The position numbers and the translations under genes are program-made. Below are positions 11,821 to 55,970 of a stretch of 64,000 nucleotides of DNA, in pieces (the stretch's first letter is position 1; each line of letters begins with the position of its first letter). The notes beneath the pieces were generated by a model. That model made no database searches, was not told where the DNA came from, and saw nothing but the letters and a program-made list of their open reading frames with translations. Source of the stretch: Schmidtea polychroa (Eukaryota); assembly GCA_044892525.1 (NCBI GenBank), contig CM097885.1, forward strand, positions 16,058,001 to 16,122,000, in the 5' to 3' direction.

Positions 11821-12199
11821 CAACAAATACAACATCAAAAAGAACCGAACAACAGCTTTCTTTGCAGTATTGGGCCAGAACGACTGGAAAACCTTTAATT
11901 CCCAAGCATATCTCCTCAACTGACTTCTATATATCCAAAACTTCGTAACCTAGAATATCTTTTTTTCTAACTACAATAATAACTAAAAAAAGGAAAATTA
12001 CAACACATTTATAACGAACATTCATTTAATTTTTGATGTTGCACAAGTCTAATAAGAATCCATAGAGTTACAGAATTACATCAAGTCTGAAATTTGAGTC
12101 GTCTAAATCAGCATTAAAGAAAATATAAGGCTGCTGGGCCAGTGTGATGGTGGATTGGGTTGTACTTGTTGAAGGCATTGGAGGGATTAATTGGAGAAT

Positions 12200-12729
12200 T
12201 AATAGCGGCTAACTCGGCTAGCCATCGGGCATTTGCCCGCTGTCGGCGCAGTCTGTGGGTCTCTGCGTATTGATTTCAATTTGCCGGAGATGGAGTCGCT
12301 ATTGGTACTGGTACTACGGAAACTGGTTGGGGCGTTGGAACTTGAGTTGTTTAAACAGGTTCTACTACACCACTGCTGGGAGGTAAGTGATGACTGAAGA
12401 TCACATCTAAGTTCATTAAGGCCGCTCCTTGTGTGATTCGAGCTTCCAATTATTTTGCCGTGTACATCTTGGGCAACGGCTCATGTTTTTTTCTAATTAC
12501 TAACCGTTGCGCCAGACTTTCCGTTACAATTTCCTGTCTAGTCCAGTCTAAGTGAAAGATGCGCTGATGTAATGTATGGGCCTTATCTGGTGAGAACCAA
12601 GTTGCCTCAAACTGATTTAGTCCTTTTGGTTTTCTTCTCGGTTGCTTCCTTAATTTCTGGATTTATTCTGTCAAATGTACCTCTCTGGGTGAAAGAGTTT
12701 TATTAGCCTAAGTTGGAAGCTTTTGCCAT
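12200..12729 (-). pseudogene. Distant degenerate homolog (copy C) of the 253-aa orphan ORF family
   Basis: Minus frame FEATWFSPDKAHTLHQRIFHLDWTRQEIVTESLAQRLVIRKKHEPLPKMYTAK*LEARI aligns with YEGTWFSPPQMKEERSKILRLEHCRDSLLEESRCQRLTIKAQSEALHKVYTEAELAKRV; it has stops and frameshifts. Confidence 0.6.
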
Positions 12730-17606: not shown

Positions 17607-19900
17607 CTGCCAAGTGTCCGCTGCTTGATAGTCAGAAAGCTCCTGGCGTTTAGCGATAAATTCCAATACAAAATTGCAGGTGAACTTAGAATCGCCCAGC
17701 CACTGGATAGCCATTTCCATAACCTAGAGAAGGAAATCCAAAATCAAATCGAATCGCAACCCCTCGACACCCATTACCTCCTCATTTGGCACCTCCTTTA
17801 ACAACTCGATCACAGTATTTAATTCGAACTCTTCGGAGAATTTAGCGAGCCTTTTCAAGCACCATTTAGTCAGCTGATCCACTGATCCGATTTCTTGCTT
17901 ATAATTAGACGCAACTGGCGCTTGATGTTATTGTTGCTGCTGTCTATGAACCGGATTGATCGATGGCTATTTCATATTACAATTCCATTCCCCATAAATA
18001 TATAACCATTTTACTTCGTTTATTTTGTGGTTCTGTGGTTTAGAATTGCACTCGGCCGTTACCACCGCGGCTGGCACCACCACCTTATTATGTACAGGAA
18101 CATCGCTGGGAATCATATCCCAGATCGATTTGCCAACTGGGATCTGTGCGGGTTTGGGTGTCTGCTTCAGCAATGACTCCTTGAATGACTACAAGAACAG
18201 AAATCATCATCTTCTTGTAATTTTATTCAATTCCAATTCATTACTGTCACTTTATTCGTTTCTATTTGATTAACTTTCATTGCTTTTTCTATTTCTTTAG
18301 TTTTCTTGGCTTTCAATGCTTCTTCGGCTTGGATTTCTACAAGTGATTTGGCTGCAGGAGAAACATTTTGAGACAAAGTTTGTCCTGATTTCCAAGTGGA
18401 AGGAGTTTCAGTTTTATTTTGACTGGTCTTTAAATTATTCCATTATAAAGATTTGTATTATAATTACAGAATAATTATTGGATTATTATTGAATTATTAT
18501 TGAATAATTATTGGATTAATGAATTATTATTGGATTAATGAATTATTATTGGATTAATGAATTATTATTGGATTAATGAATTATTATTGGATTAATGAAT
18601 TAATATATGATTAATGAATAATTATTGGATTAATGAATTATTATTGGATTATTGATTTATTATTGGATTAATGAATAATTATTGGATTAATGAATTATTA
18701 TTGGATTAATGAATAATTATTGGATTAATGAATAATTATTGGATTAATGAATTATTATTGGATTAATTAATAATTATTGGATTAATGAATAATTATTGGA
18801 TTAATGAATTATTATTGGATTAATTAATAATTATTGGATTAATGAATTATTATTGGATTAATGAATTATTATTGGATTAATGAATTATTATTGGATTAAT
18901 GAATTATTATTGGATTAATGAATTATTATTGGATTAATGAATAATTATTGGATTAATGAATAATTATTGGATTAATGAATTATTATTGGATTAATTAATA
19001 ATTATTGGATTAATGAATAATTATTGGATTAATGAATTATTATTGGATTAATGAATAATTATTGGATTAATGAATAATTATTGGAATAATGAATTATTAT
19101 TGCATTAATGAATTATTTGTGTTATTTTTAGATTAATGAATTATTAGTGTTATTATTGGATTATTGAGCTATTAATGGATTAAAGTAATTACTGTATAAA
19201 AAGTGCAAATTTAAAATCAATACAGAGAGAAAAATCCTGATATTGCCCATAATTTATTGAAACACGTGGAATTCAACATGCATTTAAATTCCCGACCAAT
19301 CACATGGAATCACGCGAGAATAACAATAATTTTTGCCCAAAATTTAAATAATATGAAAAAAATAAAATCAATTACTTCATTTGATAATTCTAATTTTTTT
19401 AAAACTTCATGTTGCTCTTTTGCTATTTTTTCTTTCAAAGTTTCTTCAGCCTGGATTTGCAGCAAAGATTTTGTTGCAATTACCGGAGGTTTAATCAAAG
19501 CTGGCATGTCATTTTTTATAGATTTTTCCTTTTCAGTAAATAACTTAATAAATATAAATTCAATTGAAATTGGTTCCTAGTTGGTAAATAACAAGATTAC
19601 TGGAATTTTGTTTGATTCAGACAAATTTGTTGATTTTGATTGCTTGTTTTTTCTATTACCTACTTCTACTATTTTCGGTTTTACTGTTCCATCAACTTTT
19701 ACTTTTAACTGAGATTCCTTTAGAGTTGGTAATTGTTCTTTTATTGATTTATCGGAATCTTTCATAACAACAGAACTGTCAGACAATTTATTTTCTGTGC
19801 CCATTTGATTGGGTGATTTTTGAGCCTGAGGAGCAGCATTCCAAATTGACTTTACCTGTTCTACTTTGCAAGTTTCTTTTGGCGAAGTATTTCGTACAAC
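17607..19900 (-). CDS. GIGYF-family protein, C-terminal exons only (GYF domain not seen; last exon possibly near 16400-16506)
   Basis: Spliced exons give two KSL(L/V)(Q/E)IQAEE motifs and LTKWCLKRLAKF..LLKEVPNEE|VMEMAIQWLGDSKFTCNFVLEFIAKR. This resembles the GIGYF1/2 C-terminal domain (FTQWCE..FLKEVES..YLGDT..FAKQFLERR). Confidence 0.6.
18480..19150. repeat. Intronic minisatellite, 19-bp unit (aatgaattattattggatt), about 30 or more copies
   Basis: Direct periodicity of 19 nt, for example 18841 and 18860. Confidence 0.9.
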
Positions 19901-21134
19901 CTATTGGAGAAAATGAAAATAATTGAAGAAAAACTATAACTTAATCAATATCTGCCAGTCTATTATAATCAATATTTTACGTATTTTAACTGTTTAATCA
20001 ATATTTCAATATAACGATAATGCCGAGTAATGGATAAATATTGAAACATAAATTCCAACATAAATATCGATCTACACAATTCTAATATCAGATATTGTGC
20101 AGATCAGACTTGAATATATATATTTTGATCAGATTTGAAAGTAACTGTGATATAGGAAATAATATAAATCAATAATTACATTGGCTAAAATTTAGTTTTG
20201 ATAAATATGATAAATACTCGACAAAGATTACATTTAAATGGGATTGGTAACTGAAGTACGAGAAAGCAAATATAGAAATTTTAATTTACTAGTCATTAAC
20301 ACAACACCAAAAAAGATTGCCAAATTCAGATTAAAAATTATTGTGTTGAATAGCGAAAAATAGCGATTTAATTTTGATCAATAGACGTGATGAAAATAAA
20401 TGAAATGTTAAAATAAAACAAAAAACAGAGAAAAGGATTTTATAGATAATATCAATAAAATAATAATTTTTTAAAAATTAAAGATAAATATGATAAATTG
20501 AAAAACCATAAGAAAATAATTGAAATGGACTCAAATTAATAAATTATCCTTCCAATGCCTATTTTTAGTACAATGAATCTTTTTTTATATATAATAAATT
20601 ATTTTGTAATTTATTAATAAAATAATTGATTTATTTTAAAAATAAATCAATTTCAATTATTTTAAAATTTCATTTATTTTCATTACAACATCAGATCAAA
20701 AATTATTGTTCAATAGCAATAAATGAAATTTTGATCTATAATCGTAATCAAAATAAGTGAAATGTTAAAAAAATAAAAACAGAGAAAAGGTGAACAGAGT
20801 AAAGGATTTTATGGATAATATCAATAAAATAATAAAACTTTTTTTCAAATTTCACCACTAATTTATTTTCCATTATATTTATAGAAAGAAGAGCTTGAAG
20901 AATATGAATCAGTAAATTTATCAAAAACATCGATATATTTTCAGGCTTTTTAATAAATATTTTATATAGGGAATGGAATAATGCGGGCATTTCAATTGTA
21001 ACAATCTATATCAACACCTGGTATTCTGAGATCATCATTGATGTATATTGTTCCTCTCCTCTTGCTTGATTGGTTTCAGTGATTACATAGAAGGGAATAT
21101 GCATACTTTTTAGGATTTTAGTATATTTAGTTAT

Positions 21135-24100
21135 TTCAACAATCTGTTGGCATATGTGGGGAAAAGAAAATTATTGCATGCATTACCATTACACACACCA
21201 TGCATCATTACTCCGCTCAGATGCTCCCCATACATACACCAAATGATCATGTACATATTCCCACGCATGAGCCCGTGGTGATGTTCCACGTTGGTGCTGC
21301 TCACACGGGTTGGAAAAGGTTAGCAGGTGAGCCTCTGCCTTAAGACTACTCCTAACCCTTTCTCGGTTCGGGTTCCATGGCGCCTTAGAAGGTCTTACCC
21401 AGTTCTACATACATAATTCAGTCCGACCTTGGTCCAAGGGGACGACCTTGTATTATTACTTACATTCGACATCATCCTTTCACTCGTATCAACTTCGATA
21501 TCCCACCTGTTAAAATCAATCGTCAGAAACAATAAGAGATGTATTAACTCATAACAAATCATTACACGCAGAATAATCAAGAACTGTTTTATATGTAAAC
21601 ATTCAGTATTTATAAACACTCAAGTTCACTTCGGGACCCTGCATAGAACAAGGCACCTTTGAATTGATCAATCGAAGGGTTCTCCGTCCGCAAGCATTTC
21701 GTCGATATCGACCGGTAATCGTTGGTTAGAAATGTACTTGATGCCTTCTGCCGGTATTACACGAAAGATTTCCTTAGTTGGGATGAAATGGCTGGAGGAT
21801 ATTTCTCTTATGGTAGATTGAGCTACAGATAATGACGCCTCGAGAGCAGCCATCGCATCTCGGCGTTTCTGATTTTTCTCGCCCCGGGTTGGCCGTTTCC
21901 GTTTGCGAGACGACGGGGGATTGTCAGTGTGCGGCGTGACGACGGGTGCCACCAGAATTGGAGCCAAGATGGGATCGGTAGGTCCACCTAACAAGGGTTG
22001 ATAACCCGATAAGGTTGGAGCTGGAACGGGCGGTAGGCACGATCCATGCCCTTGGCAGCTCGTAGTAGTCGGTTTGGATACTTGATGATGAAGAGGGAAG
22101 ACGTTCATTTTCTCTATGACGGGAAATTCCCGTACCCGCTTGGCTAGTTCTGCCTCCGTATAAACCTTGTGGAGGGCTTCTGATTGGGCTTTGATTGTAA
22201 GCCGTTGGCAACGGCTCTCCTCCAGCAAGCTATCTCTACAATGTTCTAGCCGCAATATTTTACTTCTCTCCTCCTTCATTTGTGGCGGGGAGAACCACGT
22301 GCCTTCGTAAAGGTCGATTCTTTTCTTTAAAGCCCCGATGTATAGATGGAGCTGCGCGATATCTGCATTTTTATCTGCGCAGGAGAAACATGGGCGAAGA
22401 GTTTTCTCAGCAGTTGTAGGAGTAGTCATCTAAAGAATGAGAAGTCCTTTATTTACATCATTAAAATCCTTTCTACTATTTATTTTTTTTTATAACGTGA
22501 GCTTTATCCTACCACATATGCATACAATCAGGATTGACCCCACATTCATACCTTTGACATCACTTAACTCATCCAAACCGTAAACCTTCAAATCAACTCA
22601 CCCCATCGTTCGTAATGAAAAGAAAATGAGAACCATCAAACGTTATTTCTCTACTCATATTGATATTGTACCTAGGTTCCTGGGTCGACAATTATCATCT
22701 AATCGCAATAAGTTACTTCTTACCACCGATATATTTTTTTCACTTTTATTTATTATTACCTATTAAATGTGGGTCTACTCCCTGGTTTTTATGGCTTATT
22801 GAGTTATGCCTGCTTTAATTTAAAAGAAGTAGTTCCATACTGTTGATGCACTTTGCGCTGTATTAAGTTAAAACGAATTTGTTAAAATTTATTATAAGTA
22901 TTAATTTCCCTCATAAATTATAATTTAATTATTTAAATTTTCGCATTTCATGTTGTCATAACGACGCATATCGGTATGTAGTCGTGTACTGGTTTCAGGC
23001 TCTACCTGATGTGCACTAATGTGTATTATCTCGTCTTATTCAATTATCGCTGTCCCCCCTTAACAACTTCTAGACATTGTGTCTGTTAGTGTACTTTGAT
23101 CTCGTCGTTTATTTATGCATGCCTACTAACACATTCTACTATGACGCAATGATGATGTCGACTCACTCACGTCCCTTGTATTAGTGGATTTATCTGTGTG
23201 TAGGTTTGGGTCTGCTTATCTCAGTTACAGCATTATTAGTAGATGGGCTAGACGAATGGAAGATAAGGAGTCAGACTTATAGAAGTAACGATTGTTGTGA
23301 TTTCAAGATTGCCCAAATCTGTTATCGGTTGAAAAATGGATTTAACTCTTGTGTTGTTGACTATTCTCAAAAACCTAATCGTCTCATCGATTTGGCGCAG
23401 GTCGTTCCACAGTCGAACCGCTGGAATATTTTATCTATGCTGCTTGCTTCTCTACAATAGTCGTTTCTCGATCAGATGGAAAAATTTATCGATAATTGGT
23501 TCGAAATGGTCGAATGATAATTTCCTTTAGGACTATAGTAAGTGCTTATGATTAATTAGAACTTTGCTGTTTACTTTTCTGTCAGGGCGAATCCTTATCG
23601 ATGACAGTAGCTAATCGAAGGTTGATAATTAAGTCTCCTCCACGTCAAATGACATATCACCGCGATGGGTTTAATCGCTAACGCTTTCTTAATTTATCCA
23701 TTCTTAGAAATATAGAATATTCCAGATTTTTATCATTCATCAAGAAAACGAAAATGGACGTTAGAATTATCAGTGAAGTTCGAGAATTTCATCACCCTCA
23801 AGGATAGTCGGTATTCATATTCTGACGACAGGAGGTGACCTAACTCTGAATTGAATATGGCCGAACTCAAACTCGGATTAAATATCGAAAAATGTGGTCG
23901 ATCTCCTAGAATTTCCAGTCAGCGTGTTGTCGGCATCGAAACCGTATCGCTCAGAAGCTTCCTCAATAGAAAGTTTTCGACGGCTAATTTTATGGATATC
24001 ACTCGATGAAAGGATCGTTGACTCGATTTGTTTTCTCTCACAGGGTTTCCTTACCCCTCCCAAACCACCCAAGGACAGTACGCATTTCTGCCTACTACCC

Positions 24101-24451
24101 CTGGACCGTCGTGAAGGATAACTCGACCCGACTTCACTCAAATTCTTCCCCAATAAATGTGCAATTAATAATTCATATTACTGTCAAACAAATATGGAAA
24201 TAATGAAATTTAAAAGAAAAGTCAAAATAAATAAATGTTTACCTGGCGGCCACGCCATCTGGATTCCGGGTATGATGACTCTTGCTAACGTAGGTTTTTA
24301 TATTCATTTAGTAATCATTGTAGTACCCAGGTTCATGTAGATACTTGGCTGGTTCTGTCAATTTCTGGGTATTCATATTCACAAGCTCTCTCCGAAATGC
24401 ATACGAAATTTAGCCGCATCATACCCGAACTCCAGAGGATGTCGTCGCCAG
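21135..24451 (-). mobile_element. Unclassified dispersed element, copy A: structured non-coding leader, 253-aa ORF, structured 3' domain
   Basis: Collinear homology to 50010-53083 across coding and non-coding parts. No RT, transposase, TIR, LTR or poly(A) seen, so mobility is inferred from dispersion only. Confidence 0.55.
21668..22429 (-). CDS. Orphan 253-aa protein (copy A): helical N-terminal domain, Pro-rich linker, basic NLS-like RKRKRP..KRR, conserved C-terminus
   Basis: Intact ORF with the ATG directly after a TTCTTTAG acceptor. Residues 30-88 are 58/59 identical to the 51773 copy despite about 29 synonymous codon differences. Confidence 0.85.
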   Translation of the reverse strand: MTTPTTAEKTLRPCFSCADKNADIAQLHLYIGALKKRIDLYEGTWFSPPQMKEERSKILRLEHCRDSLLEESRCQRLTIKAQSEALHKVYTEAELAKRVREFPVIEKMNVFPLHHQVSKPTTTSCQGHGSCLPPVPAPTLSGYQPLLGGPTDPILAPILVAPVVTPHTDNPPSSRKRKRPTRGEKNQKRRDAMAALEASLSVAQSTIREISSSHFIPTKEIFRVIPAEGIKYISNQRLPVDIDEMLADGEPFD

Positions 24452-25621: not shown

Positions 25622-26600
25622 TTAATAATTAAATCTCAATAATGGGAGATGATAATGCAGAAATAATAATTTCTCTGCGTTGCGTGGAAGAAGTTTATTT
25701 CTTCTCTCCTCGTAAATAATACCAGCCTCGCTGAACAATCTTTCACTGGGTATACTGCTAGGAGGCGCTGATAGGTATCGTCTAGCCACTTTTGATAGTG
25801 TTCGATAAATATTTGCGTTATTCGACAACCAAACCAACGGATTTTCGGTACGAGGAATGTTAGGATGTTTGAGAAAATTTAAAAGTTGAATATTATCTGT
25901 TGAACTTCCTACGGTATAGGTTTCTTCTTCAATGGATTTATTTTCAAATAAAATTTCATCTGTGCAAGCCCACACATCTTCATTTTTATCATGATTATTT
26001 TTTCCATGTTCTGCAGGTTCTCTCTGTTTATTGTCATTGTTTTTATCAATACTTCTAGAAGAAATATTATTCATTTCTTCTATAATCCAATTTTTAGCAA
26101 TAATTTGTGTATCGGGTTTTAAAATTTTAAGTTTGTAAATGGGATCTAATACCGTAGCTATTACATACAACTTATTCTTTTCCATATTTTCAAATGGAGC
26201 CTCTAAAGATTTTATCATTTCTTTTTTCATCGTTTGTGTTCCTTCATCGTGTAGTTTTTTACAGAGAAAGCGCTCTAAGGCAACTACATTTGGTATCACC
26301 ATCAAAATAAGAGTTTCCTCTCAACTGGCTTCAACTGTAACGATGTAAAATTGCTCCAATAAGATAACTATATTTTCAATTAATTTAAAATTTGCTGCAT
26401 TCAAGTTTGATATATTGTAATCTGAGGAATATAGTGTGATGGCATCTTTTTGTTCTAAAGTCCTCTTGAACATATGATACGTCGAATTCCATCTAGTGAC
26501 TACGACTTGTACTAATTTGTGTTGTGGAAGCGAATGTTTGGTTTGTATTTCTTTCAACTTAGTACTACCTACTTGCGAGTGATTAAAATGGGTTACTATA
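25622..26600 (-). pseudogene. hAT (ZBED/Ac-like) transposase, 3' part; its 5' part resumes at about 40061-40183
   Basis: VVTRWNSTY, IATVLDP.YK and the dimerisation motif PPSSIPSERLFSEAG; frameshift near 26310. Removing 26601-40060 restores CFICSIQLVIH..SISAKCRNIVTHFNHS. Confidence 0.85.
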
Positions 26601-27340
26601 AGTAGTGAATAGTAAGGACTCCAACTCACTTTCAAGGTCATGGAATATCAAGATCAAATATAGACCAATCGAATCATTTATTTTTTAAATTAACATTTTA
26701 TTTAATTACTTCTTTTTAATTTTATTAATTAATTATTTTATGATGTTATATTTTAATTACTTACTTTAGTTAATTTTTAATTTATTACATTTAATTAATT
26801 TATTAGTTTATTAATATTTTATTTTAATTACTTACGCTTTTTAATTATTATTATTATTATTATTATTTTTAATTTTATTTAATTACTTCTATTTTTTTTT
26901 CTCTTTAATTTTATTAGTTAATTATTTTATGATGTTATACTTTAATTACTTATTTTAGTTAATTTTTAATTTATTACATTTAATTAATTAATTTGTTTAT
27001 TAATACTTTATTTTAATTGCCAACGTTATTTAATTATTATTTATTTATTTTTTAATTTTACATTATATTCTAACAAGAGCGTAAATTATAACAATAATAT
27101 TTCAATTTGAATAAAATTTTAATTGGTAATTATCATAAAATAAAGCTGTGTTAATTTAAATAAAATGGGCATTAATTTTTCAAAACAAAGCAAAGTTTTT
27201 CATGATAAATAATAATTCTTACTTAAAACTAATTATCTAAATTAATTGGACAAATGAATTATTAAATGATAAAACATATTTTAATTAACGAAGTCAAATA
27301 ATTCACAATATATATTTTATTATTCACATAAATTTAATTG

Positions 27341-30233: not shown

Positions 30234-30314
<81 letters not shown>

Positions 30315-35100: not shown

Positions 35101-35240
35101 ATTTATTTTTCCTACCCCTTCCTTGATTTTGATTGGTCAGAATATATTTATTTTTCCTACCCCTTCCTTGATTTTGATTGGTCAGAATTTAATCATGTGT
35201 AATATATAAGCAGTAACTTTTCAAATGTTTGTCATTTAAA
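35101..35240 (+). promoter_or_regulatory. Probable Pol II promoter of PolB: 45-bp tandem duplication with two inverted CCAAT boxes, TATA and Inr (mirror at about 31410-31545)
   Basis: gattggtcagaat occurs twice, TATATAAG at about 35203, and TCATTT at 35232-35237, about 30 nt downstream and just before the first exon/intron. Confidence 0.6.
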
Positions 35241-35260
35241 CTTTTAATTTAACTTATATA

Positions 35261-36332: not shown

Positions 36333-36389
<57 letters not shown>

Positions 36390-46240: not shown

Positions 46241-46705
46241 TAAAAAATAATCAGTGGTGAAATTGGGAAAAAAGTTCTTGTAATACATGTTTAAGGATCT
46301 TCGAGGCTTTGTTAGAAGCAATTGTGGCTTTCAGGCCTCCTGAGTCTCAGATGCAGTAGTTGTAATTGTTGAATTAAATGTTTTCACCGAATTTTTGAAT
46401 AATGAACTTGGGGTCCCGATAATGAACAAGTACCACCAATTTACTTAAATCTCGTTTGACATGCGATGGAAACATAACATTCGAGAGTTCAGATAAAGAA
46501 ATTGAGAACTAAAGAAAAAAAAATTTTATATATAATTTCTACTAAATTCATTTTTTGCAAATTCATCTATTATTTTATTTGTATTAATCTGATTAAGAAT
46601 ATCTTTCTCAACATACAAAAGGGCCATATCATTCAATCTCTCTTCTCCCATAATGCTTCTTAAGTAATTTTTCACTGAAAACGATCTTTCTCCTATGCAT
46701 TAGAT

Positions 46706-49481
46706 CAGGCCCCCAGTGTTCATTGATCCACACCATATAACCAGGCCCTTGATAAGCTTTCAGGAATGTATGCAGTTGACGTTAGAGCTACACCATTAGT
46801 ACAAATACGCATTTAATATAAGCGTGGTGGTGCAGCAGTAAACTTCCGGTCACCTCTCCACATTTACACCTCACTGTGAAGTATTTAGTTATATTCTATT
46901 AAGGAAACTTCCAACTTTCATGTAGAGCGTATAATTGTGCAGAGCTGAAGATGATCCCAAGTTCGTTGGTGTGCTACTGCTACTCTAATAGCTGGCCTTT
47001 ATTCAATCCTGTAGGAGAGGTTAGGATTTACTAGTAGCTCTCTCTTAACTGTGAGGATGAGTGTGACTGGAATGAATGCATTAACGCCCTTGTTGTCATA
47101 TTATTAGGCAGGTGAGGTTGTACAATAAAACTCCTTTAGCCAACAGTTCAATTATCAAAAATTATGTTCACTACCTCTATGAACAAAACTTATAATTTTA
47201 TGTTTATATTATAAAAAAAAATCGATAATATTATAAAGTTTATATTATAAAGTTTATAATATTATCGATTTTTTTATGAAATAAATTTGCAATTTCAACC
47301 ACAGTTGAGGATGAGCACTATTACAAAAAAACGAAAAGTTGACAGTGAACACCGAGTATTTAATGATAAGTGGACATCGGATTATCTGTTTGTAGAATCA
47401 AACAATATGCTCGTTTGTCTTGTTTGCTCGCAATCAATTTCCGTTAAAAAGGAATTTAATGTAAGACGGCATTACCAGACTCAGCATGCAGAAAAGTTCG
47501 ATCAGATACAGGGACAATTAAGGAAAGATAGGATCGAATCTCTCCGAAAAGCACTTCTAGGGCAACAGACATTCTTTATCAAAGTTAATAAAGAGGTTGA
47601 GTGTGTTGTGAAGGCGAGTTTCATGATAAGTGAGATATTGCCAAGAAACTAAAATCGTTATCTGATGGGGAGTTTGTCAAAGAATGCATTGATGCTGCTG
47701 TGGATTGTATCTGTCCCGAAAAGAAACAACTTTTCTCGAATATCAGCCTTTCTCGATTTACAATCGTAAGACGAATTGATGATATTGCAAAAAACATTGA
47801 AACAATCTTGAAAGAAAAAGCTGAACTATTTCAAGCATATTCAATATGCCTTGATGAAAGCACGGATATGACAGACACCGCGCAATTTTTGTGCGTGGGG
47901 TTGATCAGGACTTCCACGTTACGGAAGAACTGTTGAAATTAGCGAGCATGAAAGGGACTACAACTGGAGAAGAGGTTTTTGATGAAATCAAAACTGCATT
48001 GGCAGAAAACGGGCTTTTTCTTCCAAAACTAACAGGAATAACGACAGACGGAGCTCCGGCAATGGTTGGAATAAAAAATGGAGTAGTTGGTTTATTGAAG
48101 GCGGAGCTTGTTAAAATGAAAGGAAGTAAGCAATTAATTTGCTTCACATTGCATAATCCACCAAGAGAATTTATGTGTAAAAGAACTAAAGATGGACCAT
48201 GTGATGACAGTTGTTGTGAAAACCGTGAATTTCATAAGATCACGTGGATTGAATAATCGACAATTCAAAGAGTTTCTCACTAGCATTGAGACAGAATACT
48301 CGGATGTAATTTACTTTAGCGAAGTTCGTTGGCTGAGCAGAGGAAAAGTATTGCATCGCTTTTATTGCCTTCGTGAAGAAATTAAACTTTTTATGGAGAT
48401 GAAGTCGAAACCAATTCCGGAGTTATCCGATCCAAATTGGCTACTTGACTTGGCCTTTTTGGTTGACATCACAACGCATCTGAATGATCTAAACACGAAG
48501 TTACAAGGCCGGGATCAACTGATAAATAATCTTTACGATCATATCAAAGGATTTCAGACAAAGCTGAAACTATGGGAGAATCAATTATCAAAGGACATTA
48601 CGGTGTATTTTCCAAATTTAACTGATTGCAAAAATGATGCAAATTTAGCTAACACGAAGAAATTTAATGAACACATAATTGCATTGAAAACACAGTTTTC
48701 TTCAAGATTTGCTGATTTTGCCGAACATGAAAATGATTTCAAACTATTTTCTGAACCATTCAGTGTTAATGTTGAGACAGCACCAGAATCAATGCAAATG
48801 GAGCTCATTGAATTGCAGTGTAATGGCGATCTGAAAAGAAAGTTTCGTGACGTCTCTTTGATTCAATTCTAAAAACTCTACATTTCTCAGAAAGCGTTTC
48901 CATCAATCCGATATCATGCGCTGAAAATGGTCTCACTTTTCCCCAGCACTTACATCTGTGAACAATTCTTTTCTAAGATGAAACAAACAAAGTGCAAAAA
49001 CAGATGTCGGCTCACTGATGATAACTTGTCAAACGAATTACGAGTAGCAACAGCAACTATCAAGGCAAATATTTCAGATTTATGTCGTGATAAGAAGTGT
49101 CAAATGTCACAGACCAAAACCAGAACAAGATTGATATTGATATGTTGGGTATATTTGAGTAGTATATGCAAACTTGAGAAGCATAAAAAATATAAATTCG
49201 AACAATCCAGAGTTTGTGCGAGTAAATAAACTATAAATATGGGATTATTAAAGTTAAATTTGGGTATTTTCATAGTTTTTATATTTTGCCTTCCAATAAC
49301 AACTAGTATATAGTATATAATATATAATATATGCCTAATCATGTAAATTTAAATGATCTTTGCTATTAAAAAGATATATTATTGGAATATACATTAATAA
49401 ATTCGTATTAAATACATCCGGCCCCCGAAACATTTACAAAGACTGAACTGGCCCCTAACAAAAACAAGTTGCTCATGCCTG
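46706..49481 (+). mobile_element. hAT Charlie/SPIN-like DNA transposon with a frameshifted transposase (about 47311-49080); left boundary tentative
   Basis: KKRKVDSEHRVFNDKW..C..C..RRHY..H, LDESTD, ITTDGAPAM, SEVRWLSRG, FPSTYICEQFFS. Right end GTTGCTCATGCCTG; flanks CATTAGAT and GATTAGAT (7/8, central TA). The left TIR matches only in CAGGC. Confidence 0.7.
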
Positions 49482-49485
49482 GATT

Positions 49486-49977
49486 AGATCATCATATGAT
49501 ATAACATAAAACGTGTTTTCTATAAAATTTTGTTTTCTTGAAAAATCATCGCCGACTTCTTTATTTTCATCAAAATTTATTTTCTCTTTTGTCGTCTGCA
49601 TAATTGAAAGACTGGTTTATTCATTTGCTACTTTTTCAACTTTCTCAAAGTCTAGCCTGAAGTTATTGATAAAGACTTTCAAGGATTTTTATAATGCTAA
49701 TTCTTTCATTCAATCAAATTCTTTTGATTGTTGTGATTTGTTCGTAGCATTAATCTTTGTGAAATTGCGTTCCATACTCCTGTCACTAGAATAATTTCAT
49801 ACTTGTTCATTTTTTTTAAATGACTTCGCTCTAACACAGTGACTTTTTCCCTCTTTTGAATTGCAAATTTCATTTATTGCTTCTTATATGTTGCTGTACC
49901 CAAAGTTCACATACAATACTACATATAATACTTTCAAATAATTATGGAATGCATTTTTGTGGCTTTCAACAATTTCA
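49486..49977 (-). pseudogene. ZMYM1-like hAT transposase fragment; with 46363-46510 it forms a ~650-bp block repeated directly at 53074-54485
   Basis: The minus strand reads ..KVFINNFRLDFEKVEK..RKQNFIENTFYVI. Each copy is interrupted by a different later insertion. Confidence 0.55.
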
Positions 49978-50009: not shown

Positions 50010-53000
50010 GATTTTGCACAAATTTTCAATTTAATTGAGTTAAGATGAGTTAATTGGTCCCTCATGACGGTGCAAGAGCGGTGGCAGAAATGTGGCCGCT
50101 CTTGGGTGTGTCGTGAGGGGTGAAGGAACTCTGTAAGTCAAGATCCAGTTAGGAAATGAATTTTCTTCATCGAGTGCGATCGTTAAAAGTGCATCCCATC
50201 ATTTCTATCAGCAATCTCCAACCGTTGCAAAGATGATTAAATTCCAAAAGGAGAATGATTCACGTTGAGATCGACATTTATATCTAGTCTTGACTTTGTG
50301 AGAATCCACATAAAATGGAAAGACCTTTTCGTGCGTAGCTTGTCTATCAGCATATTTAGAAGGAAAACTTGTTCGACCATAATTCACTAGAAATTCCGAC
50401 ATTTTCCGTAATACACCGCATTTCCGAGATTTGTCCAATATTTCGCATCGAAAGGACGTTAGCGAATGAACCCCTAATTTCATCTATCCGTAGAGTCCGA
50501 GTGGACGTGGAAATCGAGGTTTGACAGGCCACTATCATTAATAACCCGTCGATCTAGATAAAATGTAAACATTCTCCGATAATCAATACAAATACTCGCC
50601 ATAGTCTTGAGGAAAGCTGCTGTCGGCGAGTTTTGAGGGATTATCTTTCTGTTTTGTTCTGTTAGAAGTTGGCTGCAGTCGACCGATAAGAAATTGTCTG
50701 AGAATATTCAGTATACAGATTACTGGGCAACGACACCACATAGACAAGATTGACAGCGATTATCAAGAGCAAACTCTGGTCAGAAGAAATATAATCACTA
50801 AATTAAAGTTCCAACCGATAAAGTGGTGAATAAATCCGACAATTTAGAGAAATCGTTTTTCATAAGTCTAAAAAAAATTAATTTTTATCTTTCAACAGAA
50901 TCTGTTATTAATGCCACGCACAATGTCTAACAAACGTAGCAATACACACAGACAAGTCTGCCCACTCTAGGATAGTGTGTAGGTCGATATCGCCATCACA
51001 TCGAAGTGTAGTATAATAGTTCTAGATTGTGTGCATAAATTAGATAACGACGTCGCGACAATTCAGACGATAAAAATTCTCTTCGTTGTTTACCATTGAG
51101 TAGCGGTAACGAATGACTCCCAATGATAAATGCCGGCAACAATCGCATCTCAAATGAAATCTCATAAATCACCACTTGCATGCACAGGATAGGAAATGAA
51201 GTTATGACATAACAGAACAGTGAGGTTCTCCATGACGACACCTACGTCGCAAATTCAAATAACTCTACAAAATTCTGATAACAATAATTAAAATTTATAA
51301 CTTTTCTAATATATCTATTTCTTTGCACTATAAGGTTGAGAACATCAAAAGAATTTCATTCATTTCCTGTGGCATACAAAATGAGCATCTCTCAATAGGT
51401 CATAACATCAAATGAACCTAATGCAGCTAATGATTAACAGTAATAAAAAATTTATAAAAGTAAAAAACCTACACTTCCCGAACTGGGTAATAAATTAAAT
51501 AAAAATTGTCAACCCTAAAACTTGTAGGACATTGGTAATATAGTAAATGGATTTTTGACAATCTCCGTTTTCTCTTAATTTGCATGAACTGAGTTGATCA
51601 AACATGAGTGTTTGGGGGTGAATAATGGTTTCAAATATTCGCGAGTGGTCAGAGATCCGCTGAGGATCACCGAGTGAAACGCGTGAGGATATTACATAAA
51701 CCACATGATAAACTCGTAAATGATACACCAATGATCACTTCTAACCATGATAGCAAACTTCTTTAACTTTAGATGACCACACCGATCAAATCCGGAAAAG
51801 ATCTTCGTCCGTGTTTCTCCAGTTCGGACAAGAACGAGGATATTAAGAAACTACACGTCTATATCGGGGCCTTAAAGAAACGTATTGATCTATACGAGGG
51901 CACGTGGTTCTCCCCGCCACAAATGAAGGAGGAGCGTAGGAAAATCTTGAGATTGGAGCACTGTCGTGACAGTCTCCTGGAAGAAAGTAGGTGCCAGAGG
52001 CTCACAATAAAAGCCCAATCAGAGGCCCTGCATAAAATTTATACGGACGTCGAGATTGCTAAGAGGGTCCGAGAATATCCAGTTCAAGACGGGATAAATG
52101 TGTTCCCAATCCACCACCAGGCATCCGAGGTCCCACTGACTACCCGCTGCAAAGGGCATGGCTCACAATTGTCTCCCATCCTCGCTTCAGCTCTCTCCAG
52201 TTCTAGGCCCGCGACAAAGGGTCCATCGGACCCCATCTTGGCTCCGATTCTTCAGCCTCGCCAGATGCAACCAACAGTTGAAACCAAGACGCCAAATCGG
52301 AAACGTAAGCGGCCGACGCGAGTTGAGAAAAATAAAAAGCGCAGGGACGCCATTGCCGCGCTAGAGGCTTCGCTATCGGTGGCCCAATCCACCATCAAGG
52401 AAATCTCCAATTCCCATTCAATTCCAAACCAAGAAATATTCCGGGTAGTTCCGGCCGATGGTATCAAGTTCATTGCAGATCGCCGGTTGCCCATGGATAT
52501 AAATAAAATGTTAGCCGAAGGAGAAATTTTCTGATGATCCAACATAACGTCAACGTCAAGTTTAATTCGCCCTAATGGACTTAACTTTGATCCTTGCCTG
52601 CTGACAAATTCATCTATGCCTTTTATTTTGTTCATTAGATATCGGTGTAATACGTTTTGGTGTAATCCATGTGTGTGGTGGAATTAATATAAATTTTCTT
52701 GGCATTTGATGAGTTATTTATGAGATTGTTGTACAAATTGTATGGCTTGATTGCTAAATCGAATGTCAGTCATCGGATGAAGGTCGTCCCCTTGAACCAG
52801 GGTCGGACCGAGTTATGTGTGAGTGTGGGTAAGGCCTTCTATGGCACCTTGGAACCCGAACCGAGAGGGGGTTAACAGTAGTCCTAAGGCAGGGGCTCAC
52901 CTGTTAATCAACTCCAACCCATGTGAGCATCACCAACGTGTAAGATCTCCACAGGCTCACATGAGGGAATATCAGTAAAGTCATTATGGGTATGCTGGAG

Positions 53001-53083
53001 AAGGGCCAGAGCCGAATGAAGCTGAGTATATGCCTTAGGATAATCCTTTCCATTCTCCCCACATACGCCAACATAATTGTTGA
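50010..53083 (+). mobile_element. Unclassified dispersed element, copy B (homolog of 21135-24451)
   Basis: Shared blocks throughout the non-coding leader (GAAA hairpin, ttcatcgagtg, caaccgataa, tacacacaga) and the 3' domain (ggtcgtcccc, ggaacccgaaccgag, ccccacatayg). Confidence 0.55.
51773..52534 (+). CDS. Orphan 253-aa protein (copy B)
   Basis: Intact ORF of the same length as copy A. The ATG directly follows the AG of a candidate 57-nt intron (51716-51772). Confidence 0.85.
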   Translation: MTTPIKSGKDLRPCFSSSDKNEDIKKLHVYIGALKKRIDLYEGTWFSPPQMKEERRKILRLEHCRDSLLEESRCQRLTIKAQSEALHKIYTDVEIAKRVREYPVQDGINVFPIHHQASEVPLTTRCKGHGSQLSPILASALSSSRPATKGPSDPILAPILQPRQMQPTVETKTPNRKRKRPTRVEKNKKRRDAIAALEASLSVAQSTIKEISNSHSIPNQEIFRVVPADGIKFIADRRLPMDINKMLAEGEIF

Positions 53084-53517
53084 ATTAAATGTTTTCACCG
53101 AATTTTTGAATAATGAACTGGGGGTCCCGAAAATGAACAAGTACCACCAATTTACTTAAATCTCGTTTGACATGCGATGGAAACATAACATTCGAGAGTT
53201 CAGATAAAGAAAATGAGAACTAGATCATTATATGAAATAACATAAAACGTGTTTTCTATAAAATTTTGTTTTCTTGAAAAATCATCGCCGACTTCTTTAT
53301 TTTCATCAAAAATTATTTTCTCTTCTGTCGTCTGCATAATTGAAAGATTAGTTAATTCATTTGCTACTTTTTCAACTTTCTCAAAGTCTAGCCTGAAGTT
53401 ATTGATAAAGACTTCCAAGGATTTTTATAATGTTAATTCTTTCATTCAATCAAATTCTTTTGATTGTTGTGATTTGTTCGTAGCATTAATCCTTTGTGAA
53501 ATTGCGTTCCATACTCC

Positions 53518-54280
53518 CAGTGCTCGAAGTGAGGCGGGATATTATCCCGGCATTGATTATGTAGGCGGAATTGCATCCCGGCACTTCATTTCATATAATC
53601 TATAGGTTTATCCCGGTACTTATTTCATTTTATAGGCACACAAATACTGCAATTAAAGTCACACATAGTACATCCATATATGTATGTATATATATATTCT
53701 TTATTCTCTATTCTCTATTCAATTAAGAATTTCCCAAGCAGCAGTAATGGATAGGTAGGTATATTCTCTTATTTATTTTAGTTAAACCAGCAAGTTGTTT
53801 GTTGAGTTATTTATACTGCGACCCCCTCTATATATAATGTGTGCATGATTTCACATGCAGAGAGGTGTTATAATTAACGTGATAAGAAAACATATATGTG
53901 TTACGCAGATATACATACACATGCACATACTCTGAGTAAGACGTTGACGCTTTATATTTGAAACAAAATTTCCGATTATTTATCAGACAAATTTACACAT
54001 GCAAAAAATCTCTGTCATTTTGCTTGGTTAAAAATGAGAATCCCGCAGGGATTTACCCACCCCCCAAAATTGTTTGACACCCCCCCCCACATTAAAACAG
54101 GTAAACCCCCTGAAACTTATGATTAAATGGGTGGACACCCCCCCCCCCAAAAAAAAATTTGTTGGACACCCCCCAAAGTTTTGCAACACCCCCAACTGAA
54201 AATTTCTGCATAAAAGCCTGGAATCCCGGGTGCCACAGCATGCCTATCCCGGCACATATTTTGTTCCACTTCGAGCACTG
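53518..54280. mobile_element. Non-autonomous hAT-type MITE, 763 bp
   Basis: 14-bp TIR CAGTGCTCGAAGTG/CACTTCGAGCACTG and 8-bp TSD CATACTCC. The empty site is visible in the paralogous block at 49773-49780. Confidence 0.9.
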
Positions 54281-55761
54281 CATACTCCTGTCACTAGAAT
54301 AATTTCATACTTGTTCATTTTTTTTAAATGACTTCGCTCTAACACAGTGACTTTTTCCCTCTTTTGAATTGCAAATTTCATTTATTGCTTCTTATATGTT
54401 GCAGTAACCAAAGTTCACATACAATACTACATATAATACTTTCAAATAATTATGGAATGCAATTTTGTGGCTTTCAACAATTTCAAGCTGTTTCTTAATT
54501 TTATTTCGTTTTTCTGCGCCACTTTTAAAACTTTTCTATGTGCTTACTAGAGTAGATGTCACCCAACCCCCTGGTAAAATCTCAAGGTCGATTAGGAATT
54601 TTAGATAAGTGTATATAAAAAATGCTTAGTTTCCATGGAAATGAGCTCAAAACTCTCTAAATTAAAATATAGGTCACGCCATAATATAACATTTTCTGTA
54701 TATTATGAAACTAAGACAAACTTATATTATAGAATTAAACTCATATTCTTTAACACATGGGAACACAATGAACAAAAGCATAAGAAAAGTAAATTATGCA
54801 AATTAACAAAATATGCTTAGAAATATTTTGAAAAATATACTTTATTACAGAAAATTATTTTAATATCGGAAATCAACTGAATAGGAAATATACAGGAATA
54901 TTTACAGGAATATACTGGGAAACCCTCCAAACTCTAGAAAATTAAATATCCCAACTCAAAAAATTTCCCCAAATTTTAAAAGCTCCTAAAATTAATTTTC
55001 GCAAAAAATAACGTAATTTTATATATGGTCAAAATTAACTTGTAAATTTTTTTTAAAATATTACTCTATTATAGGAAATCAACCGTATAGGAAATATACA
55101 AGATTATTACAAGAAAAATCTTCCCAACTCAAATTATTACACAAATGCACTCAGTCTGGGACACATTGAGGAGCCATTGAAAGCTTGGTCACACCGCGTG
55201 CCAATACTCATGCTCATTGCGGAAAATCCAGTCAAATCGCCTTCATTGCCCGCATAAACATTACACAAATGCACTCAGTCAGGGACACATTTCTCGCTAT
55301 CCGTTCTGAGTAAGCATCCGTTTTGTACAGCTCCTTTCATGCATGCCATCCGATATGTCAGTGTAGGATCTTGTCTGTGTACAAGTTTCCACACCTTCAA
55401 ATTGAGGATCTAGAAAGGATAAAATCGAATTCCCTCAACTCATCATTAATTCATATTCATACACAAGGTAACACCATAGGTAATACTTAGCTAAATATTC
55501 TATGCGAATGATTCTTCCTTTCCTAATATTGTAGTTTGTAGGCTACGGAATAAGTGATATGCAATTATATTTGTGTCATTGTTGATATAACCTGTAGCCC
55601 CCTCATTCCCTCCATTTACCATGTCAGTTAGTGTCAAATACTTTATTCTTTCATGGCATAAAATCCTTCATTCTATAAACAAATAAGGAAGACTAAATAA
55701 ATAAGCGTTTACGACCGAATATTCCTTTATCTCGTTAAACTTTCCTTATTTACTTTCAGTT

Positions 55762-55970
55762 ATGTGCGAGCCGAGTCTACCGCCGAAAGGGCCAAGACCC
55801 TGTTTTTCCTGAGCAGACAAAAATGCCGACATAAAGAAACTGCACGAGTACATAGGGGCTTTAAAGAAATGCATTAAAACATACGAATGCACGTGGTTCT
55901 CCCCGCCACAAATGAAGGAGGTATTGAGGTTGGAGCACTGCAGAGACAGTCTCCTTGAAGAAAGTAGATA
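55762..55970 (+). pseudogene. 5' fragment (copy D) of the 253-aa ORF family
   Basis: RPCFS*ADKNADIKKLHEYIGALKKCIKTYECTWFSPPQMKEVLRLEHCRDSLLEESR; ATG 2 nt after a ctttcag acceptor; premature stop. Confidence 0.8.

What the first reader, a model, noticed from the sequence alone, without database searches (positions are those of the whole stretch)
21135..24451. Unrecognised dispersed element: strongly conserved 253-aa orphan protein embedded in about 3 kb of conserved structured non-coding sequence
Seen: copies A (21135-24451, -) and B (50010-53083, +) are collinear over a ~1.7-kb stop-rich leader, the ORF and a ~0.5-kb trailer. Both ORFs are exactly 253 aa; codons 30-88 show 1 amino-acid change against about 29 synonymous ones. 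In both, the ATG directly follows a splice-acceptor AG. Several non-coding stems covary (separate findings). I see no RT, transposase, RuvC, TIR, LTR or poly(A). Inference: an RNA-plus-protein unit under selection at both levels. Candidates are a non-autonomous retroelement whose 3' ORF is made from a spliced subgenomic RNA, an endogenised RNA replicon or satellite, or a new RNP-forming gene family. The protein has a helical N-domain and a basic RKRKRP..KRR patch that could bind nucleic acid.
Basis: partly seen in the sequence, partly recalled or inferred. Interest (0 to 1): 0.85.

Follow-up and report, generated by a model that had tools for sequence, protein, structure and literature searches.

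The report
Flatworm multicopy hairpin-plus-protein gene unit
A discrete 3-kb unit, present at least four times in this flatworm window, pairs an orphan nuclear arginine-rich protein with conserved RNA hairpins at both ends and fits no known transposon, virus or gene family, although it has not been shown to move.

Summary
Copies A (-) and B (+) are collinear. Both ORFs are 253 aa and 71% identical, and codons 30-88 show exactly 29 synonymous changes and 1 amino-acid change. Synonymous sites are saturated (pS 0.81, dN 0.21).

"3 kb of conserved structured non-coding sequence" is overstated. Only an ~85-nt 5' hairpin (fold z -5.4 and -10.8, 3 compensatory pairs) and a 215-nt 3' block (81% identity, non-coding, 5 compensatory pairs) are strongly conserved. 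The 1.6-kb leader is a weakly conserved stretch bounded by a shared GT...AG, so it is probably an intron.

The unit is about 3.05 kb and its flanks are unrelated. The 493-bp direct repeats round B are not LTRs. They belong to two copies of a separate TIR element.

Two further decayed copies (C, D) lie in the window. Eleven distant relatives, all from a planarian, sit inside chimeric gene models. Pfam, PDB, Foldseek, Rfam, IMG/VR and metagenomes gave no match.

Best reading (0.45): an unclassified, RT-less selfish element whose arginine-rich protein binds its own RNA. Main rival (0.30): a host orphan multigene family.

The parts
24042..24147 (-). Copy A, proposed exon 1 (5' UTR). It contains the conserved 87-nt RNA hairpin at 24043-24129. 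The 5' limit is approximate.
   Evidence: BLAST block at 69.5% identity. Hairpin -42.6 kcal/mol, z -5.4, 0 of 200 shuffles as stable; antisense -20.7, z -1.6. The two-sequence consensus has 28 pairs, 3 of them compensatory.
22430..24041 (-). Copy A, weakly conserved leader, proposed GT...AG intron of 1612 nt.
   Evidence: Donor CT|GTGAGA sits at the same alignment column as in B, and the acceptor is TTTAG|ATG. Global alignment z = 13, thirds z 3.7/2.5/8.4. 44-48 stops per frame.
21668..22429 (-). Copy A, intact 253-aa ORF (stop included).
   Evidence: GC 0.50 and GC3 0.49, against 0.24-0.37 in host exons of the window.
21131..21667 (-). Copy A, trailer (proposed 3' UTR). Conserved structured block at 21255-21469 (core 21261-21447) and end block at 21131-21162.
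   Evidence: 81% identity over 216 nt. Stops in all six frames and no codon periodicity. 65 consensus pairs, 0 broken, 5 compensatory on the sense strand; 46 pairs and 0 compensatory on the antisense strand.
50038..50132 (+). Copy B, proposed exon 1 with the 85-nt RNA hairpin at 50047-50131. The 5' limit is approximate.
   Evidence: Hairpin -51.7 kcal/mol, z -10.8, 0 of 200 shuffles as stable..
50133..51772 (+). Copy B, weakly conserved leader, proposed GT...AG intron of 1640 nt.
   Evidence: Donor CT|GTAAGT and acceptor TTTAG|ATG..
51773..52534 (+). Copy B, intact 253-aa ORF (stop included).
52535..53073 (+). Copy B, trailer. Conserved structured block at 52759-52972 (core 52782-52966). The end block starts at 53056, and A/B similarity runs on to 53088, inside the neighbouring element E2.
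55762..55968 (+). Copy C, a truncated fragment covering only the first ~70 codons. 71% aa identity to A and B. It has 1 in-frame stop and one 4-residue gap, and the rest is absent from the window.
   Evidence: An acceptor-like TTTCAG lies 2 nt before its ATG.
12130..12695 (-). Copy D, a decayed divergent family member. It keeps the N-domain, Pro-rich linker and basic patch in one frame. It has 4 in-frame stops, no start codon and no frameshift detected.
   Evidence: Hit by all 13 family queries, best E 2e-13, 32-37% identity. Third-position GC is 0.40. No recognisable 5' hairpin or trailer block nearby.
46363..49977 (+). Neighbour, not part of the unit: element E1. It consists of X (149 bp), broken hAT-like transposase remnants (47287-49229) and R (493 bp), and abuts B's 5' end.
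   Evidence: The exact 10-mer AATTGTTGAA and its complement occur only at the four termini of E1 and E2.
53074..54485 (+). Neighbour, not part of the unit: element E2, an internal-deletion derivative of E1 in which X is joined directly to R' with a 2-bp overlap. It carries a nested MITE at 53518-54280 and abuts B's 3' end.
   Evidence: R and R' are 96-99% identical. MITE TIR CAGTGCTCGAAGTG and 8-bp duplication CATACTCC.

Best explanation
A and B are two intact members of a multicopy family that, on present evidence, is restricted to planarians. Each is a discrete ~3.05-kb transcription unit.

Anatomy (shown):
- A short first exon that is almost entirely one ~85-nt, ~33-bp RNA hairpin.
- A ~1.6-kb weakly conserved GT...AG intron whose acceptor abuts the ATG.
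- A second exon encoding a 253-aa protein, followed by a ~0.55-kb 3' UTR with two or three conserved stem-loops.
- The protein has an N-terminal helical hairpin, a disordered proline-rich linker, a bipartite NLS-like arginine/lysine patch that continues into a long basic helix, and a short C-terminal tail.

Inferred mechanism:
- The unit is a selfish, RT-less and transposase-less interspersed element that other elements copy in trans, probably through its full-length RNA.
- The spliced RNA serves as the mRNA.
- The protein enters the nucleus, oligomerises through the helical hairpin, and uses its arginine-rich helix to bind the hairpins of its own RNA, forming an RNP.
- This follows the logic of arginine-rich viral regulators and their RNA hairpin targets, or of the ORF1 protein of LINEs.

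Mobility and RNA binding are inferred, not shown.
For: Discrete unit: the flanks are unrelated (global z -0.5 to 0.5) while every internal segment except the spacer between stop and trailer block is homologous. Homology starts about 10-16 nt before the hairpin and stops at the end block. No conserved upstream promoter region was found.

Multicopy with decay: there are four copies in 64 kb, two intact and two broken.

Dispersal: of the 11 relatives found among 1.84 billion representative proteins, at least nine are fused in gene models to nine different unrelated domains, including SNF, CRAL-TRIO, GDC-P, subtilase, ABC, actin, L21, PTPase and a hAT transposase. This is what a repeat-borne exon with a strong acceptor would produce. 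The host part of P0001 is 79% identical to a Schmidtea mediterranea protein.

Selection on the protein: pS 0.81 against dN 0.21, and the relatives keep the same architecture.

Selection on the RNA:
- The 5' hairpin folds with z -5.4 and -10.8 and is much weaker on the antisense strand. It has 3 compensatory and 9 one-sided changes.
- The trailer block is non-coding yet 81% identical. It has 5 compensatory pairs and none broken on the sense strand, 0 compensatory on the antisense strand and 0 in all slid controls.

Foreign composition: GC3 is 0.49 and 0.55, against 0.24-0.37 for host exons and for the Ty3, pPolB and hAT ORFs of the same window. Dead copy D has relaxed to 0.40.

Protein features: AlphaFold gives pLDDT ~90 for helices 17-41, 48-89 and 182-212. 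There is a bipartite NLS-like motif.
Against: - There is no direct sign of mobility: no TSD, TIR, LTR, poly(A) or microsatellite tail at A's ends, and B's ends are masked by E1 and E2.
- No RT- or transposase-encoding partner in the window shares the hairpin or trailer block.
- Four old copies within 45 kb could equally be a local gene cluster.
- An intron inside a unit copied through RNA requires that the unspliced RNA be the template, and this is unproven.
- Only two sequences support the covariation. The shuffle control reaches the observed value in 12 of 500 trials, and single-sequence fold z-scores for the trailer are not significant (-0.9 and -1.3).
- No Repbase or Dfam library could be searched, so a curated 'unknown' planarian repeat may already cover this unit.
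- No DNA of any relative could be obtained.
Confidence: 0.45

Rival explanations
1. It is a host orphan multigene family. Under this reading it is an ordinary two-exon, planarian-specific nuclear protein gene that duplicated locally long ago, giving A, B and the pseudogenes C and D. The conserved 5'-UTR hairpin and 3'-UTR stem-loops are regulatory, for example for translational control, localisation, autoregulation, or a miRNA-like hairpin hosted in exon 1.
For: - The anatomy is that of a normal Pol II gene with a shared GT...AG intron, and exon 1 adds no coding sequence.
- Four diverged copies lie within 45 kb, as in a tandem gene cluster later invaded by transposons.
- Both intact copies are under strong purifying selection despite saturated dS.
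- No hallmark of any transposon class was found.
- The ~85-nt, ~33-bp hairpin is of pre-miRNA size.
Against: - At least nine of the 11 relatives are chimeric with different host genes, which is unusual for a bona fide gene family.
- GC3 of ~0.5 is far from the host exons in the same window, while the dead copy is drifting towards host composition.
- The flanks, including any promoter region, show no homology although the intron still does.
- A, B, C and D lie on both strands among unrelated repeats.
Confidence: 0.3
2. The copies are endogenised fragments of a virus or other extrachromosomal replicon. A and B would then be independent integrations from diverged lineages that evolved outside the host genome.
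For: - Composition is foreign and stays at GC3 ~0.5 in both copies despite saturated synonymous divergence.
- The termini carry structured RNA elements on the coding strand.
- The protein combines a helical hairpin with an arginine-rich tail, which is a common capsid or nucleoprotein layout.
- Three relatives carry a PPxY motif in the C-terminal region.
Against: - No viral hit was found. Foldseek against BFVD gives a best E of 0.01 with TM 0.14, IMG/VR gives nothing, and Pfam and PDB give nothing.
- Neither copy has a polymerase or other replicon gene, and the 1.6-kb leader shows no coding signal in either.
- A conserved intron-like GT...AG with a polypyrimidine tract is a host-type feature.
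Confidence: 0.08
3. The unit is a passenger or accessory gene of a hAT-type DNA transposon. Either the segment E1-body-E2 moves as a composite, or the unit belongs to a larger hAT element.
For: - B is bracketed exactly by two same-orientation copies of one TIR element.
- Relative P0011 is fused to a hAT transposase.
- A hAT fragment lies upstream of A on the same strand.
- A's 3' boundary carries GATTGTTGAA, one mismatch from the E terminal motif.
Against: - The hAT remnants next to A, next to B and in P0011 are not related to one another.
- A's flanks show no similarity to X or R.
- No 8-bp duplication is seen at the outer or inner ends of E1 and E2.
- One-mismatch versions of the motif occur at chance frequency, 25 observed against 25.8 expected.
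- hAT fragments are common in this window.
Confidence: 0.07
4. Copy B is the internal region of an LTR retrotransposon whose LTRs are the 493-bp direct repeats (49485-49977 and 53221-54485).
For: The flanking direct repeats are 96-99% identical. A purine-rich stretch precedes the 3' repeat.
Against: - The same 149-bp X that precedes R' also occurs at 46363-46511. There it is separated from R by 3 kb that holds transposase remnants, so X...R is one element and X-R' is its deletion derivative.
- A 10-nt perfect inverted repeat sits at X's start and R's end, and nowhere else in the window.
- There is no TG...CA, no PBS after the 5' repeat, no TSD, and no gag or pol.
- Copy A has no such repeats.
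Confidence: 0.02

Closest known systems
HAL1 ('half-L1'), the ORF1-only non-autonomous derivatives of LINE-1. This comparison rests on my own knowledge, not on a tool hit.
   Same: Both are RT-less units that encode a single nucleic-acid-binding, oligomerising protein. Both are presumed to be copied in trans, and both have conserved UTRs.
   Different: - No ORF1p-type domains (RRM, CTD) were detected.
- The ORF lies in the 3' half, behind an intron-like leader.
- No poly(A) tail, TSD or 5'-truncated series was seen.
- No LINE partner was found.
Gag-only LTR elements (BARE-2 type), LARDs and TRIMs. This comparison rests on my own knowledge.
   Same: These are non-autonomous elements that keep one structural protein or none, together with conserved cis-acting RNA signals.
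   Different: The unit has no LTRs, PBS or PPT. The protein has no capsid or zinc-knuckle match.
Arginine-rich viral regulators and their RNA hairpin targets (lentiviral Tat/TAR and Rev/RRE, phage N/boxB). This is a functional analogy only.
   Same: A nuclear protein with an arginine-rich helix is encoded by an RNA that carries a stable 5'-proximal hairpin, further conserved stem-loops and a retained intron. One relative (P0004) gives a sub-threshold Pfam REV hit over its arginine-rich patch (E 0.0013, 19.1 bits against a cut-off of 22).
   Different: There is no homology, because the hit is below threshold and reflects composition. There is no viral genome context, and binding is untested.
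Lineage-specific orphan gene families with conserved UTR elements.
   Same: It is a two-exon gene restricted to one animal lineage, with no detectable homologues elsewhere, local paralogues and pseudogenes.
   Different: Composition is far from host genes. The relatives are scattered inside many unrelated gene models. The flanks are not homologous.

Membership tests
LTR retrotransposon | Two LTRs bounding the element, TG...CA ends and a 4-6 bp TSD | tested here: not met
   A has no flanking direct repeats. B's 493-bp repeats belong to the separate TIR element pair E1/E2. There is no TG start and no TSD.
LTR retrotransposon | PBS next to the 5' LTR, and gag/pol coding capacity | tested here: not met
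   No tRNA-complementary TGG... follows the 5' repeat. Pfam finds no gag, PR, RT, RNase H or IN in any ORF of the unit. The leader has 39-48 stops per frame.
Non-LTR retrotransposon (LINE) or its ORF1-only derivative | RT/endonuclease ORF, or an ORF1p-type protein (coiled coil plus RRM/CTD, esterase or zinc knuckle) | tested here: not met
   There is no RT or EN. The protein has no Pfam, PDB-sequence or Foldseek match.
Non-LTR retrotransposon (LINE) or its ORF1-only derivative | Poly(A) or simple-repeat 3' tail, variable TSD, and 5'-truncated copies | tested here: inconclusive
   No TSD was found at A. The sequence after A's end block is A-rich but is not a tail. B's 3' end is masked by E2. 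Fragment C is 3'-truncated, not 5'-truncated. Too few copies are available.
hAT or other TIR DNA transposon | Terminal inverted repeats, a TSD, and a transposase (or ends shared with an autonomous partner) | tested here: not met
   There are no inverted termini of 8 nt or more at A's ends, and no transposase in the unit. The neighbouring hAT remnants are unrelated to each other.
Ribozyme-bearing retroelements (retrozymes, Penelope-like elements, HDV-like 5' ribozymes of LINEs) | A hammerhead or HDV-like self-cleaving motif | tested here: not met
   Rfam 15 finds no match on either copy, at gathering threshold or at E <= 1.
Hepadna/nackednavirus-like endogenous element. I considered this because of the ~3-kb size and the helical-hairpin-plus-arginine-tail layout of the protein. 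| A core-protein fold and a polymerase ORF covering most of the genome | tested here: not met
   A hepatitis B core chain appears only at Foldseek rank 16 (E 2.6, probability 0.16). There is no polymerase ORF or remnant.
Animal miRNA host gene | The hairpin is processed into ~22-nt small RNAs | not testable with these tools
   The hairpin's size and stability are compatible. There is no Rfam miRNA hit, and no small-RNA data were available.
Ordinary spliced Pol II gene | A GT...AG intron shared by paralogues, a polypyrimidine tract, and a poly(A) signal | tested here: inconclusive
   A and B share GTRAG at the same alignment column and share TTTAG|ATG. ATTAAA is present in B only, and it lies inside E2. 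No transcript evidence was available.

The most novel reading that the evidence does not exclude
The unit could be a new class of RT-less, transposase-less selfish RNA-protein element in flatworms. Under this reading, its terminal hairpins are recognised by its own nuclear arginine-rich protein, the unspliced RNA is the copied form and the spliced RNA is the mRNA, and its non-host base composition reflects replication by a borrowed or extrachromosomal polymerase.
Probability: 0.15. Interest if true: 0.8.

Novelty: new variant of a known kind. Interest (0 to 1): 0.55.

Why it matters
If the unit is mobile, it would be a non-autonomous element type with an architecture not described for any superfamily: a terminal hairpin, an intron, one arginine-rich protein and a 3' stem-loop block. 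It would also give a simple case for studying how an element's own protein recognises its RNA in an animal whose genome is mostly unclassified repeats.

If it is a host family, it is still a planarian-specific nuclear protein with unusually constrained UTR hairpins, which would be worth an expression and binding study.

There is also a practical consequence. Its strong acceptor and long ORF contaminate flatworm gene models: at least nine of the 11 database relatives are chimeras with unrelated genes.

Tried and rejected
- LTR reading of the 493-bp repeats round B. Rejected in favour of two copies of a separate TIR element.
- Hidden coding in the leader or trailer. tblastx, stop counts, codon periodicity and Pfam on all minor ORFs found nothing.
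- Long-range 5'-3' pairing (cyclisation) between hairpin and trailer. Duplex energies are no better than shuffles (0.34 and 0.50 of shuffles at least as stable). One search timed out.
- A larger unit interrupted by E1 and E2. A's flanks are not homologous to the sequence outside E1/E2, nor to X or R.
- TSD or TIR at A's ends. Only a low-complexity 9-mer was found.
- A conserved link with a hAT transposase. The three hAT remnants are unrelated.
- Remote homology of the protein. Nothing significant came from Pfam, PDB sequences with a single query or a profile, Foldseek against PDB and BFVD, or the word-index search.
- Known RNA families. Rfam found nothing at gathering threshold or at E <= 1, and there are no tRNAs.
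- Outside DNA copies. IMG/VR gave nothing with the protein, and the motif search gave a single chance 17-mer hit. Exact look-ups of A, B, P0002 and P0009 found nothing.
- Literature searches on planarian repeats and virus-like elements gave no match.
- The sigma-70 promoter/terminator scan is irrelevant to a eukaryote and was at chance level.
Full report
CONTEXT. The window is 30.8% GC and rich in repeats. It holds the following:
- a proteasome alpha-6 exon;
- TRAF/MATH ORFs;
- a Ty3-type RNase H-integrase ORF;
- hAT transposase fragments;
- a 6-kb inverted duplication carrying protein-primed PolB ORFs.

The proteasome exon is closest to flatworm proteins, at 56-65% identity. The source is therefore a flatworm, probably free-living. 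The species was not determined.

THE OBSERVATION. Both 253-aa ORFs exist and are 71% identical in protein and 68.7% in DNA.
- Over the whole ORF, 101 codons differ synonymously and 73 change the residue. By Nei-Gojobori, pS = 0.81 (saturated) and dN = 0.21.
- The two copies are therefore old lineages held by strong purifying selection.
- A and B are collinear, but conservation is very uneven. The well-conserved parts are a 5' block (about 70% identity), the ORF, a 216-nt trailer block (81%, better than the ORF) and a 33-nt end block.
- The leader between the 5' block and the ATG aligns at about 50-55%. It is only just recognisably homologous (global z = 13; thirds z = 3.7, 2.5, 8.4).
- The stretch between the stop codon and the trailer block is at chance level.
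- Outside roughly 24147-21131 (A) and 50038-53088 (B) there is no similarity. This also holds for the sequence beyond the elements that flank B.

NON-CODING BLOCKS.
- The trailer block has stops in all six frames in both copies. Its 34 mismatches fall 12/15/7 over the three phases, whereas in the ORF 150 of 250 mismatches are at third positions. It is constrained non-coding sequence.
- Its two-sequence consensus fold on the ORF strand has 65 pairs, none broken, 5 with compensatory double changes and 10 with one-sided G-U-compatible changes.
- The opposite strand gives 46 pairs and no compensatory change. Sliding the partners gives none, and 12 of 500 shuffles reach the observed value.
- Single-sequence fold z-scores for the trailer are not significant (-0.9 and -1.3). 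I rate this structure as moderately supported.
- The 5' block is much clearer. It forms an ~85-nt, ~33-bp hairpin of the same shape in both copies: -42.6 kcal/mol (z -5.4) in A and -51.7 kcal/mol (z -10.8) in B, with none of 200 shuffles as stable. It is far weaker on the antisense strand. It has 3 compensatory and 9 one-sided changes.
- Rfam has no match, even at E <= 1.
- A suspected pairing between the 5' and 3' blocks is no better than chance.

GENE MODEL.
- Two nucleotides after the base of the hairpin, both copies have a donor-like GTRAG at the same alignment column.
- Both have a pyrimidine-rich ...TTTAG directly before the ATG, and fragment C has ...TTTCAG 2 nt before its ATG.
- Joining the predicted exons as they stand adds no coding sequence. 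An in-frame stop lies 9 nt upstream of the ATG in both copies, and the upstream ATGs give short, non-conserved uORFs.
- The simplest anatomy is exon 1 (the hairpin), a 1612- or 1640-nt intron, then exon 2 (the ORF plus a structured 3' UTR).
- Spliced-leader trans-splicing at the same AG is an alternative that I cannot exclude. No transcript data were available.

THE PROTEIN. It has no match in Pfam, in PDB sequences with a single query or a family profile, or by word-index search.
- An exhaustive HMMER search of 1.84 billion representative proteins found 11 relatives, with E from 1e-10 to 1e-4.
- They share the N-domain, including invariant W45, P48, L68, E71, R73, R76, Q82, P112 and H115.
- Where the model extends far enough, they also share the proline-rich linker, the arginine-rich patch and the following helix.
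- At least nine of the eleven are gene models fused to unrelated domains: SNF transporter, CRAL-TRIO, glycine-cleavage P protein, subtilase, ABC ATPase, actin, ribosomal L21, tyrosine phosphatase and a hAT transposase.
- All are singletons with UniParc identifiers only, and no DNA is on record for them.
- The transporter part of P0001 is 79% identical to Schmidtea mediterranea Slc6a-5, so the relatives come from a triclad planarian.
- AlphaFold with the 13-sequence alignment gives confident helices at 17-41, 48-89 (together a helical hairpin), 92-101 and 182-212, with a disordered 105-175.
- Foldseek finds nothing significant in PDB or BFVD.
- A and B carry a bipartite NLS-like motif (RKRKRPTR.EKN.KRR) at the start of the basic helix.

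MORE COPIES. tblastn with the family found two further members in the window.
- C (55762-55968, +) keeps only the first ~70 codons. It has one in-frame stop and one short gap.
- D (12130-12695, -) is a divergent copy that keeps the whole architecture in one frame. It has four in-frame stops and no start codon.
- Neither has a recognisable hairpin or trailer block nearby.

THE REPEATS ROUND B. B is flanked by 493-bp direct repeats that are 96-99% identical, and they look like LTRs. They are not.
- The 149 bp before the downstream repeat (X, 53074-53222) recur at 46363-46511.
- There, X is separated from the upstream repeat (R, 49485-49977) by 3 kb that holds broken hAT-like transposase pieces, including a Spin-doc zinc finger and a hAT C-terminal motif.
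- Downstream, X is joined directly to R' with a 2-bp overlap.
- X starts and R ends with a perfect 10-nt inverted repeat that occurs nowhere else in the window.
- So E1 (46363-49977) is a TIR element. E2 (53074-54485) is its internal-deletion derivative and itself carries a MITE with an 8-bp duplication.
- B simply lies between them.
- I found no TSD for E1 or E2, and I cannot explain why both abut the ends of the unit.
- The hAT remnants near A, near B and in relative P0011 are unrelated to one another.

COMPOSITION. The two ORFs have GC 0.50 and GC3 0.49 and 0.55. The host exons and the Ty3, pPolB and hAT ORFs of the same window have GC3 0.24-0.37. The dead copy D has a third-position GC of 0.40. 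A GC3 that stays near 0.5 while synonymous sites are saturated means the active lineages are not at the host's mutational equilibrium.

INTERPRETATION.
- Shown: a discrete ~3.05-kb unit; at least four copies, two of them decayed; protein-level and RNA-level constraint; a hairpin-intron-ORF-structured-trailer anatomy; and a family known only from planarians.
- Inferred: that it is a selfish interspersed element lacking its own polymerase, and that the nuclear arginine-rich protein binds the unit's own hairpins.
- I prefer this reading (0.45). The reasons are that the relatives are scattered within many unrelated gene models, the composition is foreign, the homology has sharp limits with unrelated flanks, and decayed copies lie among other repeats.
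- A host orphan multigene family (0.30) explains the intron and the local clustering equally well and is not excluded.
- An endogenised replicon (0.08), a hAT passenger (0.07) and an LTR element (0.02) are less likely.
- No known family passed a membership test.

LIMITS. Only two full copies were available, so covariation is suggestive rather than proven. No curated repeat library (Repbase, Dfam) and no eukaryotic genome collection could be searched, so 'unclassified' means unclassified by the tools at hand. Profiles of the A/B alignments (not sequences) were built for the nhmmer search.

- While reading the tool translations of C and D I remarked on where the stops lie. This report gives counts only.

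Noticed in passing
46363-49977 and 53074-54485: Two copies of one TIR element with terminal 10-mer AATTGTTGAA/TTCAACAATT. The longer copy holds hAT-like transposase remnants broken into at least five ORF pieces. The shorter copy is an internal-deletion derivative joined with a 2-bp overlap. No 8-bp TSD is visible for either. Both abut the ends of copy B, which I cannot explain.
   Followed up: yes
53518-54280: A 763-bp MITE nested in R', with terminal inverted repeat CAGTGCTCGAAGTG... and an 8-bp target duplication CATACTCC.
   Followed up: partly
24243-24451: A 209-bp GC-rich foldback with 35-nt inverted arms (80% complementary), just upstream of copy A and absent from B. It is probably a separate small insertion.
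   Followed up: partly
21131-21147 (-): A's 3' boundary reads GATTGTTGAA, one mismatch from the terminal motif of the E element that abuts B at the homologous point. One-mismatch versions occur at chance frequency in the window, so this may be coincidence, but the position is striking.
   Followed up: partly
26601-32614 and 34033-40054: A 6-kb inverted duplication at 98.9% identity. Each arm carries an 862-aa ORF with a protein-primed DNA polymerase B domain (PF03175, E 4e-32), of the Maverick/Polinton type, plus a weak endonuclease VII hit.
   Followed up: no
9506-11857 and 59450-62221: A segmental repeat at 87-92% identity that carries TRAF/MATH-domain ORFs (9458-10018, 59414-59932) and an integrase zinc-finger-like ORF (11241-11555).
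   Followed up: no
13300-14754 (+): An open 484-aa ORF with Ty3-type RNase H, integrase zinc-binding and integrase core domains. No RT or gag lies upstream, where the decayed copy D sits on the opposite strand.
   Followed up: no
25622-26641 (-) and 46538-46699 (-): Further hAT transposase fragments. The first has a C-terminal dimerisation domain (E 2e-17) and lies upstream of A. The second is a reversed C-terminal piece, 40% identical to the transposase part of relative P0011. They are not related to the transposase in E1.
   Followed up: partly
18352-19200: A long tandem array of a 19-bp unit, with more than 34 registers and about 90% identity.
   Followed up: no
43806-46039 (+): An integrase-like C-terminal ORF next to an N gap, followed by three ORFs (87, 223 and 107 aa) with no Pfam match. 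This may be another unclassified element.
   Followed up: no
5864-6556 (+): A proteasome alpha-6 exon (230-aa ORF, GC3 0.24), closest to cestode and trematode proteins at 56-65% identity. It was used to place the window among flatworms.
   Followed up: yes
relatives P0002, P0003, P0011: Three planarian relatives carry a PPPY motif in the C-terminal region, which is a WW-domain-binding (late-domain-like) motif. A and B lack it.
   Followed up: no
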